Virus record (IMG/VR): IMGVR_UViG_3300020473_000013
Span: 124,001-188,000 of that record
DNA: 64,000 nt
Direction: 5' to 3' (one strand)
Positions 3,822-9,807 of the stretch are shown in pieces (position 1 is the first letter of the stretch; each line of letters begins with the position of its first letter). A program made the translations under genes and the position numbers. The notes under the pieces were generated by a model that was not told the DNA's origin, searched no databases, and saw nothing but the letters and a program-made list of their open reading frames with translations.

Positions 3822-4532
3822 ATGGCTAAGAAGGCACCTTCCGCCGAGAAGAAGGCAAAGTCTACCAAGAAGGCTGCGAAGACAGGCGGCAAGGTCAAGA
3901 AGTCCAAGCTGCCGAAGAAGCTCACGGTCAAAGCGCTCGCAGACGCCAGCGCTGAGTACAACCCGCGTGTCATCAGCGCCCGTCAGCTCAAGGGTCTCCA
4001 GACCTCATACGAGACGTTCGGTGACCTGAGTGGTATCGTGCTCAACCGTGCTACCGACACCATCGTGTCTGGTCACCAGCGCCTCAAGACACTGAAAGGC
4101 AAGAAGACTCGTGTGGTGACCGAGGACCACAAGGATAAGTACGGCACTGTCGAAGTCGGACATATCGAGGTCCTCGAGGATGGTACGCTCACCAAGATTC
4201 CTTTCCGCGTCGTAAACTGGTCCGACGACAAGGCGGAGAAGGCAGCCAACATCGCGGCGAACGCCCACGGCGGGGACTTCGACAACAACAAGCTGGGTAA
4301 GCTGTTGGAGGAGCTGGAACCTACTGAGGCCTTTGAGATCGAGCAGCTCGGTTTGGACCCGTTAACCATTCGCTCGCTCGGTGGTGGAGCCTCCGCTGCT
4401 GAGGAACCCAAGACAAGTAAGAAGGACAAGCCTGTCGAGGGCGAGCAGGATGATGACGATTCGTTCGGCGAGTACGACGAGAACTCCTTCGAGTTTGAAC
4501 ACCAGTGCCCTCGCTGCTCCTTCAAGTGGTGA
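3822..4532 (+). CDS. ParB/Srx-like domain protein with Lys-rich N-terminus and C-terminal CxxC ribbon
   Basis: YNPRVIS...FGDLSGIVLN...IVSGHQRL ParB-N signature; HQCPRCSFKW at the C-terminus. Confidence 0.8.
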   Translation: MAKKAPSAEKKAKSTKKAAKTGGKVKKSKLPKKLTVKALADASAEYNPRVISARQLKGLQTSYETFGDLSGIVLNRATDTIVSGHQRLKTLKGKKTRVVTEDHKDKYGTVEVGHIEVLEDGTLTKIPFRVVNWSDDKAEKAANIAANAHGGDFDNNKLGKLLEELEPTEAFEIEQLGLDPLTIRSLGGGASAAEEPKTSKKDKPVEGEQDDDDSFGEYDENSFEFEHQCPRCSFKW

Positions 4533-4537
4533 TCTGA

Positions 4538-5734
4538 ATGGCAAAGAAGAAGACGAAGACCAACGAGAAGTTTGTACCGAAGGACCCTACATCCAAGGTC
4601 GCCAAGATCGACGGCAGGGAAGTCGAGTACAACGGCGTGACGCTGGCTGATGATACCGGCGTCTCCCGCAATCATCTGGCTATCGCCGAGCCGTTGGAAG
4701 GCGGCAAGAGCCTCGTGCCTACGATGGCCAAGATCAATAAGAAGCGCAAGGACTTCACGTCCGTCAGCTTCTTTGCGGGTTGCGGTGGTGCATCCGTCGG
4801 CATGAAGATGGCAGGCTTCAACGTACTGCTATCTAACGAGTTCATTCCCGCGGCTCAGGACACTTATCAGCTCAATCATCCTGGCACCATCCTGAACAAG
4901 TCCGACATTCGTGAACTCGACCCTAAGGCCTTGCTCAAGGAGCTTGGCCTTAAGAAAGGCGAGCTGGATCACATGGACATGAGCCCTCCTTGCAAAGGCT
5001 TCTCCGCTGCAGGTGTTCAGGAAGACGGCTGGAACAAGGAGGTCCTTTACTCCGACGGTGTGAAACAGCGCGTGGATGACCTATTCGATCAAGGCATCCG
5101 GATGCTCAAGGGTATGAAGCCCAAGACGTTTACCGCCGAGAACGTGTCTGGTCTGGTGCGCGGCGTGTCCCGAGGTCTGTTCGCTGAGACCATAGAGGAC
5201 TTCAAGAAGGCCGGCTATCGCGTCAAGGCTGCGATGATCGAGCCCGTGAAGCTCGGCGTCCCGCAGACACGCGCCCGCCTCATCATCATTGGTGTGCGCA
5301 ATGACCTGAAGATGGACCCTGTATTTCCGAAGCCGTTGAAAGGACGGCCCGTTACCGTGCAGGACGTTCTCCCTCACATCGCATACCTCAAGACGAGCCT
5401 CAAGTCTCGCCTGACCTACGTTCCTGCTGACCGCCCTAGCCCCACGATCGTGGCATCCGATTTTGATACAGGGGAGAACGCGCGGTTCAGTTGCGGAGGC
5501 TGGGTAGAAGACGATCAAGGCCGCCGTCGTAAATACACGTTGCCCGAACTCCGCCGCGTCATGTGTTTTCCTGACGACTTCAAGTTGTCTGGGACTCCGC
5601 GCCAGCAATGGGAGCGTCTGGGCCGTTCACATGTCCCTCTCCAGGTTTACCACCTCAGCAAGGCAATCCGGGAGAACGTTCTGGAGCCCTACTATGACAG
5701 CAAGGGAGCGGATTACACCGACACGATTAAGTGA
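4538..5734 (+). CDS. DNA cytosine-C5 methyltransferase homologue, predicted carboxymethyltransferase
   Basis: Motif I FAGCGG, IV SPPC, VI ENV, VIII QTRAR, IX RRVMCFPD; motif X reads LGRSH (Asn->Arg). Confidence 0.9.
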   Translation: MAKKKTKTNEKFVPKDPTSKVAKIDGREVEYNGVTLADDTGVSRNHLAIAEPLEGGKSLVPTMAKINKKRKDFTSVSFFAGCGGASVGMKMAGFNVLLSNEFIPAAQDTYQLNHPGTILNKSDIRELDPKALLKELGLKKGELDHMDMSPPCKGFSAAGVQEDGWNKEVLYSDGVKQRVDDLFDQGIRMLKGMKPKTFTAENVSGLVRGVSRGLFAETIEDFKKAGYRVKAAMIEPVKLGVPQTRARLIIIGVRNDLKMDPVFPKPLKGRPVTVQDVLPHIAYLKTSLKSRLTYVPADRPSPTIVASDFDTGENARFSCGGWVEDDQGRRRKYTLPELRRVMCFPDDFKLSGTPRQQWERLGRSHVPLQVYHLSKAIRENVLEPYYDSKGADYTDTIK

Positions 5735-5738
5735 CCGC

Positions 5739-6011
5739 ATGACCGACCAAGACCTACACCAACTGAGGGAGCACATCCGTTCCCTTGAAAACCGCCTCCT
5801 CATAATGGGCTTGGCTCGCGAGGAGGCAGTTCAGGAATACCGGGTCCGTGTATCCTCCGAGTTGTCCATTGATCCGGACAGCCCTGGCTTAGCCTGCATG
5901 GAGCGAAGCATGTTCGTCTCCCGAGGCCAGCAGTTGGGGCTGTCCGACTCCGTATTGGAGAGCATGGCTGATGCACTGTTCCCTGCCACCGTCAGACCTG
6001 ACTGTAAATAA
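5739..6011 (+). CDS. hypothetical protein within the modification cluster
   Basis: 90 aa ORF filling the gap between the MTase and cmoA. Confidence 0.55.
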   Translation: MTDQDLHQLREHIRSLENRLLIMGLAREEAVQEYRVRVSSELSIDPDSPGLACMERSMFVSRGQQLGLSDSVLESMADALFPATVRPDCK

Positions 6012-6017
6012 AGGGCA
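6003..6017 (+). promoter_or_regulatory. putative phage promoter TGTAAA-N6-GCA
   Basis: TGTAAATAAAGGGCA directly upstream of the cmoA RBS; overlaps the upstream stop codon. Confidence 0.6.
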
Positions 6018-6036
6018 AACAACCGGAGGATTGACC

Positions 6037-6756
6037 ATGTACGAAGAAGATCGCGTTACCCCGAAGGATAACTGGGAGTTCGACGAGGACGTTGCCAAGT
6101 GCTTCGACAATATGCTGGAGCGCAGTATTCCCATGTATCAGGAAATGCGCAAGCTGTGTCATAAGCTCGGACGCAATTTCGTCCAGCCTCACAATTCCAT
6201 CATCGACCTCGGCGCTAGCCGCGGTGAAGCGCTCCGCCCTTTCATCGAGGACGACACTGCCAACAAATTCATGGCCGTGGAAATCTCCGAGCCTATGCGC
6301 ACTGTCATGCAGGACTTGTACCGGCATAATCCCAAGGTACGTATCTCCGATATGGACCTGCGCAAGCTCGACCAGAACGTGGGCACCCTCAGCTCTCATT
6401 CCATCTCTCTGGCTATGTCCATCCTGACTATCCAGTTCACTCCTATCGAGTATCGCCAGCAGATCATGCAGGCTATCTACGACATGTTGGAGCCCGGTGG
6501 AGCTTTCCTGTTTGTCGAGAAGGTGATCGGCAACACGGCGTCTCTGGACCGCATGTTTGTTCAGGAATACTACGACATGAAGAACCAGAACGGTTACAGC
6601 TACGAGGACATCCAACGCAAGCGCAGTTCCCTCGAAGGTGTTCTGGTTCCCGTGACAGCTAGCTGGAACGAGGACATGTTGAAGAACGCTGGTTTCCGTC
6701 AGGTGGACTGTTTCTACCGCAATCTCAATTTCGCTGGCTGGCTCGCAATCAAGTAA
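6037..6756 (+). CDS. cmoA: carboxy-S-adenosyl-L-methionine synthase (CmoA family)
   Basis: WEFDEDVAKCFDNMLERSIPMY, DLGASRG, LTIQF, VEKV, QRKRSSLEGV (conserved CmoA Arg), NLNFAGWLAIK all match CmoA; GGAGG RBS. Confidence 0.9.
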   Translation: MYEEDRVTPKDNWEFDEDVAKCFDNMLERSIPMYQEMRKLCHKLGRNFVQPHNSIIDLGASRGEALRPFIEDDTANKFMAVEISEPMRTVMQDLYRHNPKVRISDMDLRKLDQNVGTLSSHSISLAMSILTIQFTPIEYRQQIMQAIYDMLEPGGAFLFVEKVIGNTASLDRMFVQEYYDMKNQNGYSYEDIQRKRSSLEGVLVPVTASWNEDMLKNAGFRQVDCFYRNLNFAGWLAIK

Positions 6757-6764
6757 GGTGCATC

Positions 6765-7583
6765 ATGACTCTCCAAGTACGGGAACACATCACCAACACC
6801 GTAGCCAAGACGGGTGACCGATCCTGCTCGGTGCTGATGTCCTCTGGGATCGACAGCCACAGCGTCCTGTTCTCGTGCTTGGACGCTGGTCTGAAACCTG
6901 TAATCACCTCATTCACCTTGGATGACCGCGAGTCTCGCGACTTCCGAGCAGCGCGCCACGCTGCGGCCTACTTCGATCTGGAGTTCAGGCCCGTAGTTCT
7001 CAGCACGGACCTCACCAAGTTGAAGAAGCGCGTTCTCCAGATGGCGCGCCTTGGAGTTAAGGGTAAGACCGCCTTCGAGTGTCTCTGGCCTATGTTTACC
7101 GCGTTCTCTGCAATCAAGGAGGACGTGGTGTTTAGCGGTTACGGCGCCGACGCCTATTTCGCCTTGAGCAAGCGCGGCACCATGCACTATAAGGACGACG
7201 TGAGCAAGTACGCTCTGGAGGCTTTCGAGAAGTACAAGGAGCCCGACTCCCAGCTCAACGTCCTCAAGGCGTTCGCTGCCAAACGCGGTATCACCTACGC
7301 TCCTCCGTGGTTGAACAAGCACATCACCCGCCAGGTTCGGGAGCGTGTCTTCACCTGGGACGAGTTGAATCGGCCCAAGCAAAAGAATCCCGTCCGTGAG
7401 CAGTACGCCGAGTACCTCGCGGGCTGCATGGTGTACAATCATGTAAACTACCAGCTAGGCGACAGCGGAATCTCCGAGTTATTCACCAAACTACTGGACG
7501 ATCCTGTCTGGAACGCTGCGGGCTACAAATCAACCACGGGCATTTTTAACTCCGTGGTTCGAGGGGAGATCACTCAGGTATGA
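6765..7583 (+). CDS. asparagine-synthetase-like PP-loop ATP-dependent amide ligase lacking the glutaminase domain
   Basis: PP-loop SSGIDS and SGYGAD motif of the AsnB synthetase domain; 272 aa; no N-terminal Cys GATase. Confidence 0.8.
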   Translation: MTLQVREHITNTVAKTGDRSCSVLMSSGIDSHSVLFSCLDAGLKPVITSFTLDDRESRDFRAARHAAAYFDLEFRPVVLSTDLTKLKKRVLQMARLGVKGKTAFECLWPMFTAFSAIKEDVVFSGYGADAYFALSKRGTMHYKDDVSKYALEAFEKYKEPDSQLNVLKAFAAKRGITYAPPWLNKHITRQVRERVFTWDELNRPKQKNPVREQYAEYLAGCMVYNHVNYQLGDSGISELFTKLLDDPVWNAAGYKSTTGIFNSVVRGEITQV

Positions 7584-8032
7584 ATCCGTTTACCCATCTA
7601 CGCGCTCAGGTGAAAGCCAATCTGGAGCGCGAAGCGAAGCTGTCTCCTGCAGAGAGACGGCAGCATCAATGGCAGTTCTTCACGACCGTAGGCGAAGTCA
7701 CCTACATCGTAGGCAAAGGCGGTGCCAACACCATGTTCTATATGGTTGGCCAGAACGGTGAACGACACATGTGCAGCCCCAAGGACATGCTGGACATTAT
7801 CAGCTCCTGGGGCCAGTCACGGTTCGCTGTGTACGCTGTCTGTAAGAAGCCCAGCAAGTTCAGCCACGGTCCTTTCCAATCCGAGGAAGAGGCACTCGCC
7901 GTAAAGGATGCGCCGAAAGGAAGCTACATCGTTGGCATCACACCCGAGAACAAGGTGATCAGACTCCACAAGCTCAAGAGCGGCCTGATGGATGACAAGT
8001 GGGTCCCGTTCAAGCCGAAGAAGAAAGGATAG
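7580..8032 (+). CDS. hypothetical protein
   Basis: 150 aa; ATGA overlap with the upstream gene. Confidence 0.7.
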   Translation: MNPFTHLRAQVKANLEREAKLSPAERRQHQWQFFTTVGEVTYIVGKGGANTMFYMVGQNGERHMCSPKDMLDIISSWGQSRFAVYAVCKKPSKFSHGPFQSEEEALAVKDAPKGSYIVGITPENKVIRLHKLKSGLMDDKWVPFKPKKKG

Positions 8033-9684: not shown

Positions 9685-9784
9685 GCACTATCACGGTATT
9701 CCTAGAGGCTGGGTGCAAGCGTGCGTTGGCGCCTGCTTCTTGAGTATCGCGCACACCTCTATTAAAACCTCCGTTACATCCTTG

Positions 9785-9807
9785 GGGAGCCTTTGGGCTC
9801 CCTTTTT
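9785..9807 (+). terminator. intrinsic terminator
   Basis: GGGAGCC-TTTG-GGCTCCC followed by TTTTT. Confidence 0.85.

What the first reader, a model, noticed from the sequence alone, without database searches (positions are those of the whole stretch)
6765..7583. Stand-alone asparagine-synthetase domain with no glutaminase: the amine donor defines the final base
Seen: 272 aa protein starting almost directly at the PP-loop (SSGIDS), with SGYGAD but no N-terminal Ntn glutaminase; the AYFALSKRGTMHY segment differs from amino-acid AsnB. Inference: it cannot release ammonia from glutamine, so it probably ligates free ammonia, an amino acid or a polyamine onto DNA-bound 5cxmC. That would make it a DNA-acting amide ligase and a possible DNA-labelling tool.
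Basis: partly seen in the sequence, partly recalled or inferred. Interest (0 to 1): 0.78.

Follow-up and report, generated by a model that had tools for sequence, protein, structure and literature searches.

The report
Phage DNA carboxymethylcytosine amide ligase (CmoY)
This gene encodes a glutaminase-less asparagine-synthetase-like enzyme of the recently described CmoY family, which in marine jumbo phages most likely attaches an amine to carboxymethylated cytosines in the phage's own DNA; the kind is already known, but which amine this unusual variant uses is not.

Summary
In detail: ORF 6765-7583 (+) encodes a 272-aa stand-alone Asn-synthetase synthetase domain with a PP-loop (SSGIDS) and SGYGAD, and no glutaminase here or anywhere in the complete 224.9-kb phage genome. 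Yang et al. (Nat Commun, Dec 2025, PMC12783734) showed that phage CmoA makes carboxy-SAM, CmoX carboxymethylates DNA cytosine, and CmoY, a glutaminase-less Asn-synthetase homologue, ligates glycine onto 5cxmC with ATP.

The window holds the full module: ParB-like, CmoX (SPPC and the diagnostic Arg), a hidden chorismate-mutase-like ORF, CmoA, the ligase, and a coupled 150-aa companion. The ligase is 32% identical to SpCmoY and joins its similarity cluster. Natural CmoX-ligase fusion proteins exist.

What remains open is the amine. The protein belongs to a rare, derived sub-clade that has lost an Arg kept in about 87-99% of the family (A150), gained Tyr at the AsnB-E348 position (Y126), and differs at other positions too. 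A sibling phage with 65-88% identical flanking genes carries a ligase only 31% identical, so the ligase is exchanged like a cassette. A non-glycine product is plausible but untested. Verdict: new member of a known kind, moderate interest.

The parts
3822..4532 (+). ParB-like (ParBc) protein, first gene of the module
   Evidence: phrog_620 'ParB-like partition protein' E 1.8e-31. It is 53% identical to PaBG_00176, 'ParB-like containing domain nuclease', 42% to the L009 homologue and 68% to the L016 homologue. ParBc proteins were reported next to many CmoX genes (PMC12783734).
4538..5734 (+). CmoX: DNA cytosine C5-carboxymethyltransferase homologue. SPPC is at nt 4982-4993 and the diagnostic Arg R363 at nt 5624-5626. 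The true start may be M63 at nt 4724.
   Evidence: Pfam DNA_methylase E 5.5e-45. The alignment with SpCmoX shows SPPC and R363 aligned to SpCmoX R350, where canonical C5-MTases have Asn (paper). It is 51% identical to the PaBG protein and 88% to the L016 protein.
5739..6011 (+). Small 90-aa ORF, AroQ/CM_2 chorismate-mutase-like, which would supply prephenate to CmoA
   Evidence: The ORF in the same slot in L015 is CM_2 (PF01817, E 1.5e-7, 32 bits against a cutoff of 27). A profile of the three slot ORFs hits chorismate mutases in six of its seven best PDB matches (1ybz, E 0.0022). All 100 nearest Atlas clusters are CM_2 (top score 0.87, 186 shared features). The window ORF alone has no Pfam hit, so this assignment is probable, not certain.
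6037..6756 (+). CmoA: carboxy-SAM synthase homologue. The mechanical ORF starts at 5971, but the true start is most likely 6037, behind a GGAGG sequence.
   Evidence: NCBIfam CmoA equivalog TIGR00740, E 2.2e-42, 145 bits, below the curated cutoff of 193. phrog_4752 E 1.2e-74. It is 29% identical to the biochemically active SpCmoA and 47-52% to the PaBG and Erwinia phage proteins. Shine-Dalgarno sequence and start.
6765..7583 (+). The finding: a CmoY-family ATP-dependent amide ligase (Asn-synthetase synthetase domain only)
6840..6857 (+). PP-loop S26-S-G-I-D-S31 (ATP pyrophosphatase motif)
   Evidence: S26, G28, D30 and S31 are invariant in 115-195 family members. They align to the AsnB S234-GGLDS-S239 motif.
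7134..7151 (+). S124-G-Y-G-A-D129, aligned to AsnB S346-G-E348-G-S-D351. Y126 is a hallmark of the sub-clade.
   Evidence: HMMER alignment to 1ct9. Y126 is found in all 9 sub-clade members and in none of the other 186 in the first set. The position is highly variable in the wider family.
7212..7214 (+). A150: the sub-clade's replacement of a near-invariant family Arg
   Evidence: Arg in 184 of the 186 other family members, including SpCmoY and PaBG, and Ala in 9 of 9 sub-clade members. Arg in 124 of 142 diverse 50%-identity representatives.
7383..7385 (+). K207, an invariant Lys aligned to AsnB K429 (KHILRE motif)
7580..8032 (+). 150-aa companion protein of unknown function, translationally coupled to the ligase (ATGA overlap)
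   Evidence: Overlap seen. phrog_23597, function unknown. 46% identical to PaBG_00179, which lies inside PaBG's module; 32% to the L009 neighbour; 76% and 58% to the L016 and L015 neighbours. No Pfam, NCBIfam or Atlas assignment.
9784..9803 (+). Terminator-like hairpin after the downstream peptidase gene, a possible end of the co-directional transcription unit
   Evidence: 8-bp stem with 6 G-C pairs followed by a T-run. This is a pattern match only; terminator-like sites were not enriched over shuffled sequence.

Best explanation
The ORF encodes a CmoY-family, ATP-dependent amide ligase that works on the phage's own DNA. Inferred pathway: a small chorismate-mutase-like protein makes prephenate. 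CmoA converts SAM and prephenate to carboxy-SAM. CmoX transfers the carboxymethyl group to C5 of cytosines in double-stranded DNA, giving 5cxmC. The ligase then uses its PP-loop to adenylate the 5cxmC carboxylate, releasing PPi, and an amine attacks the acyl-adenylate to form an amide, releasing AMP. The product is a hypermodified cytosine that presumably protects the DNA from host nucleases. There is no glutaminase domain, so the amine is a free small molecule. For the characterised homologue SpCmoY it is glycine. For this protein, a member of a rare derived sub-clade with a remodelled site (A150 in place of a near-invariant Arg, Y126, extra Tyr and Trp residues), the amine is undetermined and may differ. 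Shown here: the fold, the motifs, homology to SpCmoY, gene context, fusions, and the presence of matching sequence in RNA libraries. Inferred: every catalytic step for this protein, the DNA substrate, and the amine.
For: Homology to the assayed enzyme: 31.6% identity, 88% coverage, E 2e-23 to S-B43 CmoY. The protein is in one single-linkage cluster with SpCmoY at the paper's SSN cutoff of E<=1e-56. Biochemistry of the homologue: PMC12783734. Fold: pLDDT 96.3; best PDB matches are the synthetase domains of beta-lactam synthetase, CarA, ASNS and AsnB. Catalytic set conserved: PP-loop, D59 (=AsnB D279), K101, D129 (=AsnB D351), K207 (=AsnB K429). Context: the order ParB-CmoX-(CM)-CmoA-ligase-companion is repeated in PaBG, in L009, a second complete 261-kb genome whose ligase carries the same sub-clade signature, and in L015 and L016. 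CmoX carries SPPC and the Arg that binds the carboxymethyl group. Rosetta-stone evidence: four proteins fuse a CmoX domain (SPPC plus ERxG/AR) to this ligase domain. Tight coupling of the genes. No glutaminase and no CmoB in the complete genome. Metatranscriptome contigs at 99% identity or more cover pieces of all module genes, including the ligase.
Against: Nothing was assayed on this protein, and identity to SpCmoY is only about 32%. Seven of the nine sub-clade ligase loci examined show no CmoX or CmoA in the DNA held around the ligase (up to 8 kb each side; three of the contigs are only 2-5.6 kb). Two of them follow a thymidylate-synthase-like gene and a PLP-enzyme-like gene instead. The sub-clade may therefore accept other carboxylates. 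CmoA scores below NCBIfam's curated cutoff. RNA libraries can contain DNA, so transcription is not proven.
Confidence: 0.8

Rival explanations
1. Same enzyme class and the same product as SpCmoY: it ligates glycine (or another small alpha-amino acid) to 5cxmC, giving 5gcxmC. The sub-clade's substitutions would then be neutral or compensatory.
For: The protein is in the same single-linkage cluster as SpCmoY at E<=1e-56. The paper states that the largest cluster and several smaller ones keep the residues that bind the glycine carboxylate. K136, H141, K101 and K207 are conserved in this protein.
Against: A150 replaces an Arg present in 184 of 186 other members, including SpCmoY. There are correlated changes at Y126 (the AsnB E348 / beta-LS Y348 position), Y149, an inserted Y157, W182, and K100G and K43I. 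There are also clade-level switches: R58 vs Y56, Q163 vs G161 (the AsnB D384 position), and S256 vs R253. A sibling phage carries a ligase only 31% identical in an otherwise 65-88% identical module, which argues for functional diversification.
Confidence: 0.35
2. Same enzyme class but a different amine without an alpha-carboxylate (ammonia, giving 5-carbamoylmethylcytosine, or an alkylamine, amino-alcohol or polyamine). The phage would then carry a cytosine hypermodification that has not been described.
For: The near-invariant R150 and two other basic residues are lost, and about five aromatic residues are gained in a monophyletic, derived sub-clade (SH-aLRT 98). Position 126 lies at the AsnB E348 / beta-LS Y348 site next to the attacking nucleophile (for the alignment; the residue roles are from my knowledge of the AsnB and beta-lactam synthetase literature). 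The ligase is exchanged like a cassette between sibling phages. The paper itself notes clusters with distinct pocket residues and unknown amines.
Against: It is not shown that R150 contacts the amine; it could bind DNA or the adenylate. R150 is also lost in about 13% of diverse family members, mostly to V, L or I, so it is not strictly essential. Outside the sub-clade Y126 usually co-occurs with R150. No amine-supplying gene is seen in the module.
Confidence: 0.4
3. The ligase acts on a carboxylate other than DNA 5cxmC: another modified base, a nucleotide-level intermediate, or a protein or peptide carboxylate as lasso-peptide cyclases do. Its position next to CmoA would then be incidental.
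For: Most sub-clade relatives lack CmoX and CmoA nearby and have other partners: a TS-like plus PLP-like pair in L007 and L012, and unknown genes in L005, L006, L013, L014 and L017.
Against: In the window and in L009 the ligase is embedded in, and translationally coupled with, a complete CmoX/CmoA module found in both deep branches of the sub-clade. CmoX-ligase fusions exist in the family. The contigs without CmoXA are fragments of jumbo genomes, so the genes could lie elsewhere on them.
Confidence: 0.1
4. An ammonia-dependent asparagine synthetase for free aspartate (an auxiliary metabolic gene), as annotated in PaBG ('asparagine synthase', listed under amino-acid metabolism).
For: Pfam Asn_synthase hit. 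GenBank annotations and the PaBG paper list the homologue as metabolic.
Against: It scores 40 bits against the TIGR01536 cutoff of 267. The positions aligned to the AsnB residues thought to hold aspartate are not conserved: D384 aligns to Q163 and R387 to V166 (for the alignment; the roles are from the literature as I recall it). About 110 C-terminal residues of AsnB have no counterpart. The homologue SpCmoY acts on DNA. CmoX fusions exist.
Confidence: 0.02

Closest known systems
SpCmoY of Synechococcus phage S-B43 (UniProt A0A514ABJ0, GenBank QDH50619.1; Yang et al., Nat Commun 2025, PMC12783734)
   Same: A stand-alone ~271-aa Asn-synthetase synthetase domain without glutaminase. PP-loop, D59, K101, D129, K136, H141, K207 and Q230 are all conserved. 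It is encoded next to CmoA and CmoX in a phage, and the two proteins are in the same single-linkage similarity cluster at E<=1e-56.
   Different: Only about 32% identical. The gene order differs (cmoA-cmoY-cmoX in S-B43, cmoX-CM-cmoA-ligase here). The host phage is a cyanomyovirus (Kyanoviridae) rather than a PaBG-like jumbo phage. The window protein has A150 vs R150, Y126 vs I123, R58 vs Y56, Q163 vs G161, S256/G259 vs R253/D256, a D233 insertion and a 2-residue insertion with Y157. S-B43 has no ParB-like, CM-like or 150-aa companion gene beside its module.
PaBG gp180 'asparagine synthase' (AGS82056.1) and the module PaBG_00176-00180 of Pseudomonas phage PaBG (Baikalvirus)
   Same: The whole locus is syntenic: ParB-like, C5-MTase, CmoA, 150-aa companion, ligase, endopeptidase, clamp loader, SbcC. 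The ligase is 38% identical, and the other genes 41-54%.
   Different: The PaBG ligase keeps R150 and has H126. Its companion lies before the ligase rather than after it. It has never been characterised and was listed as a metabolic gene.
E. coli asparagine synthetase B (PDB 1CT9) and human ASNS
   Same: The fold of the synthetase domain (TMq 0.72), the PP-loop, the SGxGxD motif and the KxxxRE lysine; presumably the same acyl-adenylate chemistry.
   Different: No Ntn glutaminase domain and no ammonia tunnel. It covers only AsnB residues ~207-443. E348 is replaced by Y, D384 by Q and R387 by V. A family-specific 'LSK(K/R)' insertion is present. It scores far below the AsnB equivalog cutoff.
Beta-lactam synthetase (1JGT, 1MC1) and carbapenam synthetase CarA (1Q15)
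   Same: These are the best structural matches (E 8e-11). They are Asn-synthetase-fold enzymes that adenylate a carboxyethyl or carboxymethyl carboxylate and use a non-glutamine amine. A Tyr sits at the position of beta-LS Y348 (the dyad role is from the literature as I recall it).
   Different: Those enzymes keep a vestigial N-terminal domain, form an intramolecular lactam on a small molecule, and pair the Tyr with Glu382. Here the aligned residue is Q163, and the substrate is inferred to be DNA.
QueC (7-cyano-7-deazaguanine synthase, PDB 3BL5)
   Same: PP-loop ATPase N-terminal half (profile E 1e-7 over residues 21-80). A weak PHROG hit labelled 'QueC-like'.
   Different: The similarity is limited to the ATP-binding half, and Foldseek TMq is only 0.34. 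The context is CmoX/CmoA, not 7-deazaguanine genes.

Membership tests
CmoY (phage 5cxmC-DNA amide ligase; Yang et al. 2025) | Asn-synthetase ATP-binding (synthetase) domain only, without the glutamine-hydrolysing domain | tested here: met
   Pfam and HMMER cover AsnB residues 207-443 only. The protein is 272 aa and the upstream gene ends 8 nt before its start. No GATase_7 domain in the whole genome.
CmoY (phage 5cxmC-DNA amide ligase; Yang et al. 2025) | Sequence homology to SpCmoY, within the ligase similarity network at E<=1e-56 | tested here: met
   Direct comparison: E 2e-23 (tblastn) and 2e-29 (BLASTP), 31.6% identity. The link at 1e-56 is indirect, by single linkage through P0057 and others, in a 195-sequence sample rather than the paper's 2,251. 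At 1e-70 the two fall in separate clusters.
CmoY (phage 5cxmC-DNA amide ligase; Yang et al. 2025) | Encoded beside CmoA and a CmoX that carries SPPC and the Arg equivalent to SpCmoX R350 | tested here: met
   CmoX 4538-5734 has SPPC and R363. CmoA 6037-6756 hits TIGR00740 at E 2e-42, though below the curated cutoff. The genes are adjacent and co-directional.
CmoY (phage 5cxmC-DNA amide ligase; Yang et al. 2025) | Intact adenylation machinery (PP-loop SxGxDS and the conserved Asp and Lys residues) | tested here: met
   S26, G28, D30, S31, D59, K101, D129 and K207 are all present and invariant or nearly so in the family.
CmoY (phage 5cxmC-DNA amide ligase; Yang et al. 2025) | Pocket residues that bind the glycine carboxylate (paper's Supplementary Fig. 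8) | tested here: inconclusive
   The residues are shown only in a figure and are not named in the text or supplements held. The best candidate from conservation, R150, is Ala in this protein, but its contact with glycine could not be verified because no coordinates were available.
CmoY (phage 5cxmC-DNA amide ligase; Yang et al. 2025) | ATP-dependent ligation of glycine to 5cxmC in dsDNA | not testable with these tools
   This needs expression and LC-MS, as was done for SpCmoY.
Asparagine synthetase B (glutamine-hydrolysing; TIGR01536) | N-terminal Ntn glutaminase domain, and a full-length match above the equivalog cutoff | tested here: not met
   40.2 bits against a cutoff of 267.1, and only profile positions 236-369 are matched. 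No glutaminase domain.
Asparagine synthetase B (glutamine-hydrolysing; TIGR01536) | Residues E348, D384 and R387 of the aspartyl-adenylate site | tested here: not met
   The aligned residues are Y126, Q163 and V166 (for the alignment, for the columns). The functional roles are from the literature as I recall it.
Beta-lactam / carbapenam synthetase | Two-domain architecture with a vestigial N-terminal domain, and a Tyr-Glu catalytic dyad | tested here: not met
   The protein has a single domain. The Tyr is present (Y126), but the dyad partner position is Gln (Q163).
QueC | Full-length QueC fold and a 7-deazaguanine gene context | tested here: not met
   Only residues 21-80 match. TMq is 0.34. 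The neighbours are CmoX and CmoA.

The most novel reading that the evidence does not exclude
The window's ligase belongs to a rare, derived CmoY sub-clade (one representative among 1.84 billion 50%-identity clusters). Its remodelled site (R150A, Y126, added Tyr and Trp, lost Lys) would make it couple 5cxmC to an amine other than glycine, perhaps ammonia or a cationic or neutral amine. This marine jumbo phage would then carry a cytosine hypermodification that has not yet been described. The ligase, swapped as a cassette between sibling phages, would be the component that diversifies the final base in the arms race with host nucleases.
Probability: 0.35. Interest if true: 0.65.

Novelty: new member of a known kind. 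Interest (0 to 1): 0.42.

Why it matters
The CmoA-CmoX-CmoY route gives phage DNA a carboxylate handle that can be amidated, and it has been proposed as a DNA-labelling tool. Only one ligase (glycine-specific SpCmoY) has been characterised, and the authors could not assign amines to other clusters. This window offers a concrete, well-folded candidate with a clearly altered site, in a complete marine jumbo-phage genome, for finding a second amine specificity.

The comparison also shows that sibling phages keep CmoX and CmoA but swap the ligase. That pattern is expected if the amide group is what escapes host restriction. It also points to residues 126 and 150 as first targets for specificity engineering.

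Two side observations bear on open questions from the original paper. A chorismate-mutase-like gene sits inside the module, so prephenate supply may be phage-encoded. Natural CmoX-ligase fusions also exist.

Tried and rejected
- Megablast of the module against GenBank phages gave no match; only protein-level searches found relatives.
- The search for related loci with the single protein found nothing in viral contigs. The sub-clade alignment found one locus, L009.
I therefore could not check whether sub-clade relatives lacking nearby CmoXA carry it elsewhere on their contigs.
- I looked for the CmoY pocket residues named by the paper. They are only in a figure, and text searches of the paper and supplements returned none.
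- I wanted to measure whether residues 126 and 150 line the amine pocket, but structure prediction exposes no coordinates.
- I first thought the Y126/A150 pairing might be a family-wide covariation. The exhaustive search showed that outside the sub-clade Y126 usually occurs with R150, and that R150 is lost independently in about 13% of representatives. I therefore dropped the pairing as a general rule.
- My first tabulation of those representatives was off by one column and was redone.
- The 150-aa companion gave no Pfam, NCBIfam or Atlas assignment.
- Rejected readings: a tRNA cmo5U route (no CmoB in the genome), a split glutaminase partner (none), and QueC.
- No single partner gene is shared by all nine sub-clade ligase loci.
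Full report
**1. The observation**

The + strand ORF 6765-7583 (ATG to TGA) encodes 272 aa.
- SSGIDS is residues 26-31, SGYGAD is 124-129, and AYFALSKRGTMHY is 130-142.
- Pfam Asn_synthase matches only the first 152 of 354 profile positions (E 1.9e-10).
- A 12-sequence family profile aligns to E. coli AsnB (1CT9) residues 207-443 only. That is the synthetase core, without the glutaminase domain and without AsnB's last ~110 residues.
- The upstream gene stops 8 nt before the ATG, and an AAGGTG sequence precedes the start. A longer N-terminus is therefore not possible.
- The complete genome has no GATase_7 domain, while the control rang in 14 of 14 genomes.
- The AlphaFold2 model is very confident (mean pLDDT 96.3, pTM 0.92).
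- Foldseek's best PDB matches are the synthetase domains of beta-lactam synthetase, carbapenam synthetase, human ASNS and AsnB (E 8e-11 to 1e-7, TMq 0.6-0.72).

**2. Where it sits**

The window is part of a complete 224,853-bp viral genome with direct terminal repeats. It was found in several marine metagenomes. The genes around the ORF are co-directional and tightly packed:

| Coordinates | Gene | Main evidence |
|---|---|---|
| 3822-4532 | ParB-like | phrog_620 |
| 4538-5734 | C5-cytosine methyltransferase homologue (CmoX) | Pfam E 5.5e-45 |
| 5739-6011 | small ORF, chorismate-mutase-like | section 7 |
| 6037-6756 | CmoA homologue | true start behind GGAGG; TIGR00740 E 2e-42, below cutoff; phrog_4752 |
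| 6765-7583 | the ligase | this finding |
| 7580-8032 | 150-aa ORF | its ATG overlaps the ligase stop (ATGA) |
| 8701 onward | peptidase, clamp loader, SbcC | |

The same order is found in Pseudomonas jumbo phage PaBG, so this is a PaBG-like marine jumbo phage.

**3. What is known**

Yang et al. (Nat Commun, 7 Dec 2025, PMC12783734) worked on Synechococcus phage S-B43. They showed that:
- CmoA makes carboxy-SAM from SAM and prephenate.
- CmoX, a C5-MTase homologue with SPPC and Arg350 in place of the usual Asn, installs 5-carboxymethylcytosine in dsDNA.
- CmoY ligates glycine to 5cxmC with ATP, both in E. coli and in vitro. [quoted passage not shown]
- Native phage DNA carries 5gcxmC.

They catalogued 2,251 associated ligases. 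They noted one cluster with a glutaminase domain and several clusters with different pocket residues whose amines are unknown. They also proposed the system as a DNA-functionalisation tool. I found no follow-up paper on other amines.

**4. Is the window protein a CmoY?**

- It is 31.6% identical to SpCmoY over 88% of its length (E 2e-23). It is closer (37-39%) to uncharacterised proteins of PaBG and of Erwinia, Yersinia and Salmonella jumbo phages.
- I ran an all-against-all BLAST of 195 family members. At the paper's network cutoff (E<=1e-56) the window protein and SpCmoY fall in one single-linkage cluster. At 1e-70 they separate into clusters of 70 and 120.
- The adenylation machinery is intact and invariant: S26, G28, D30, S31, D59 (AsnB D279), K101, D129 (AsnB D351) and K207 (AsnB K429).
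- The window's CmoX has SPPC and R363 aligned to SpCmoX R350.
- Independent support comes from the exhaustive profile search. Four proteins of 608-701 aa fuse a C5-MTase domain to this ligase domain. All four MTase domains carry SPPC and the ERxG/AR motif, so they are CmoX domains. Two further proteins fuse the ligase to a weakly UDG-like domain.
- The genome has no CmoB, which argues against a tRNA route.
- Contigs from two marine metatranscriptome samples match pieces of every module gene at 99% identity or more, including three pieces inside the ligase. This is consistent with expression, although DNA carry-over cannot be excluded.

I conclude with about 0.8 confidence that this is a CmoY-family amide ligase acting on 5cxmC in DNA.

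**5. What is different about this one**

*Clade-level switches.* Comparing the window's clade (75 sequences) with the SpCmoY clade (120) gives these differences: R58 vs Y56, Q163 vs G161 (the AsnB D384 position), S256/G259 vs R253/D256, and a D233 insertion.

*The sub-clade.* Within its clade the window protein belongs to a small group of 9 sequences, or 10 with L009.
- The group is monophyletic (SH-aLRT 98) and nested deep among Arg-150-bearing lineages, so its state is derived.
- It has A150 where 184 of the 186 other members, including SpCmoY and PaBG, have Arg.
- It has Y126 at the position of AsnB E348, which was never Tyr in the other 186.
- It also has a two-residue insertion carrying Y157, plus F149Y, Y182W, L170Y, K100G and K43I.
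- It collapses to a single 50%-identity representative among 1.84 billion (475 bits, with the next hit at 277 bits). The variant is therefore rare.

*Limits on this reading.*
- In 142 diverse representatives R150 is present in 87% and has been lost independently elsewhere.
- Position 126 is one of the most variable active-site columns (L, H, I, S, D, Y, A, F).
- Outside the sub-clade Y126 usually co-occurs with R150.

So the window's sub-clade is one of several lineages with a remodelled site. This fits the paper's remark about clusters with distinct pockets.

*What I could not verify.* I could not check that R150 touches the amine. Coordinates are not exposed and the paper names no residues in text. 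From my knowledge of the literature, AsnB E348 and D384, and beta-lactam synthetase Y348 and E382, flank the attacking nucleophile. Residues 126 and 163 should therefore be near the amine. That is inference, not a result obtained here.

**6. The ligase as an exchangeable cassette**

| Gene | Identity, window vs L016 |
|---|---|
| ParB | 68% |
| CmoX | 88% |
| CmoA | 68% |
| companion | 76% |
| peptidase | 77% |
| clamp loader | 78% |
| SbcC | 65% |
| ligase | 31% |

- L016's ligase is of the R150/L126 type. L016 also has an extra DUF1611 gene before its ligase.
- L015 has a 2OG-Fe(II) oxygenase after its ligase.
- The window ligase's nearest relatives (56-57% and 71%) lie in phage contigs with other neighbours. 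In L007 and L012 a ~425-aa protein, a thymidylate-synthase-like protein and a PLP-enzyme-like protein sit where the window has ParB-CmoX-CM-CmoA. L007 keeps the window's downstream synteny.
- None of that trio is in the window's genome.
- L009, a second complete 261-kb genome in the other deep branch of the sub-clade, has the same ParB-CmoX-CmoA-ligase-companion order as the window.
- No partner gene is shared by all nine sub-clade loci.

The same data leave about a 10% chance that sub-clade ligases accept other carboxylates.

**7. Side findings on the pathway**

*The small ORF 5739-6011.* It occupies the slot that in L015 holds a bona fide CM_2 chorismate mutase (32 bits against a cutoff of 27). 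A profile of the three slot ORFs hits chorismate mutases in six of its seven best PDB matches (best E 0.0022). All 100 nearest Atlas clusters are CM_2. The window ORF alone is too divergent for Pfam. If real, the module makes its own prephenate for CmoA. The paper listed prephenate supply as open and never mentions chorismate.

*The 150-aa companion.* It travels with the ligase in PaBG, L009, L015 and L016 and has no recognisable family.

**8. Verdict**

The kind is already described.
- I file it as a new member of a known kind. It is a CmoY-family ligase in a PaBG-like marine jumbo phage, with an unresolved and possibly different amine specificity.
- Interest is moderate (0.42). It is not a surprise to a specialist after December 2025, but it is a good, specific candidate for finding a second amide hypermodification and for mapping specificity determinants.

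| Reading | Probability |
|---|---|
| Amine is some other amine | about 0.4 |
| Substrate is a different carboxylate | about 0.1 |
| Classical Asn synthesis | about 0.02 |

Noticed in passing
window 5739-6011 (+): An unannotated 90-aa ORF lies between CmoX and CmoA and looks like an AroQ/CM_2 chorismate mutase. It would supply prephenate, CmoA's co-substrate. The same slot in L015 (4163-4429) is a Pfam-significant CM_2, and L016 (3994-4254) has a divergent counterpart. The CmoX/CmoY paper does not mention it.
   Followed up: partly
window 7580-8032 (+): A 150-aa ORF is translationally coupled to the ligase (ATGA overlap). It is conserved next to or near the ligase in PaBG (PaBG_00179), Erwinia phage pEa_SNUABM_5, L009, L015 and L016. 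It has an invariant YxVGKGGANTxFY motif. It matches no Pfam, NCBIfam or Atlas family, so its function is unknown.
   Followed up: partly
L016:6120-7004 vs window 6765-7583; flanks in L016:773-13737: The ligase has been replaced between sibling phages. Flanking genes are 65-88% identical, but the ligases are only 31% identical and of different site type (R150/L126 in L016, A150/Y126 in the window).
   Followed up: yes
proteins P0195, P0214, P0223, P0311 (and P0332; P0250, P0322): Natural fusion proteins of 608-701 aa join a CmoX domain (SPPC plus ERxG/AR) to a CmoY-type ligase domain. P0332 combines a partial ligase with the C-terminal part of a C5-MTase. P0250 and P0322 join the ligase to a weakly UDG-superfamily-like domain.
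   Followed up: partly
L007:5108-7998 and L012:5136-7996: In two relatives of the window's phage the sub-clade ligase is preceded by a ~425-aa protein (weak N6/N4 DNA-methylase hit), a thymidylate-synthase-like protein and a PLP-enzyme-like protein ('threonine dehydratase' PHROG), in place of ParB-CmoX-CM-CmoA. This may be a different, undescribed route to a carboxylated base. None of the three is in the window's genome.
   Followed up: partly
L016:5102-6115; L015:6358-6984: Extra genes are inserted in the module of sibling phages: a DUF1611 (P-loop plus Rossmann-like) protein between CmoA and the ligase in L016, and a 2OG-Fe(II) oxygenase between the ligase and the companion in L015. These suggest further or different decoration steps.
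   Followed up: no
L015:1857-4154; L016:1633-3981: The CmoX genes of these two sibling phages are interrupted by an intein (Hint and Intein_splicing domains, with a faint LAGLIDADG hit in L016). The window's CmoX has none.
   Followed up: no
window 5971-6036 and 4538-4723: The mechanical ORF starts are probably too early. CmoA most likely starts at ATG 6037, behind a GGAGG sequence; the 22 residues before it have no counterpart in homologues. CmoX has a Lys-rich ~60-residue N-terminal extension absent from S-B43, PaBG and the fusion proteins, so its real start may be M63 (nt 4724).
   Followed up: partly
window 4538-8032: Contigs from four marine metatranscriptomic runs (two samples, one study) match pieces of CmoX, the CM-like ORF, CmoA, the ligase and the companion at 99% identity or more. 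The phage also recurs in several independent marine metagenomes from 2014 to 2025.
   Followed up: partly
window 3822-4532, C-terminus: The ParB-like protein ends in a conserved H-x-CPRCS motif shared with the L009 homologue. This may be half of a zinc ribbon, and it follows an acidic linker.
   Followed up: no
L017:1057-2040: Downstream of the closest ligase relative (P0002, 71% identical) is a 328-aa protein. By eye, its N-terminal 'LFVLDHMPTEDLESGKIFSG' stretch resembles family-4 UDG motif A without the catalytic residues. That would echo the ligase-UDG-like fusions. I did not test it with a profile.
   Followed up: no
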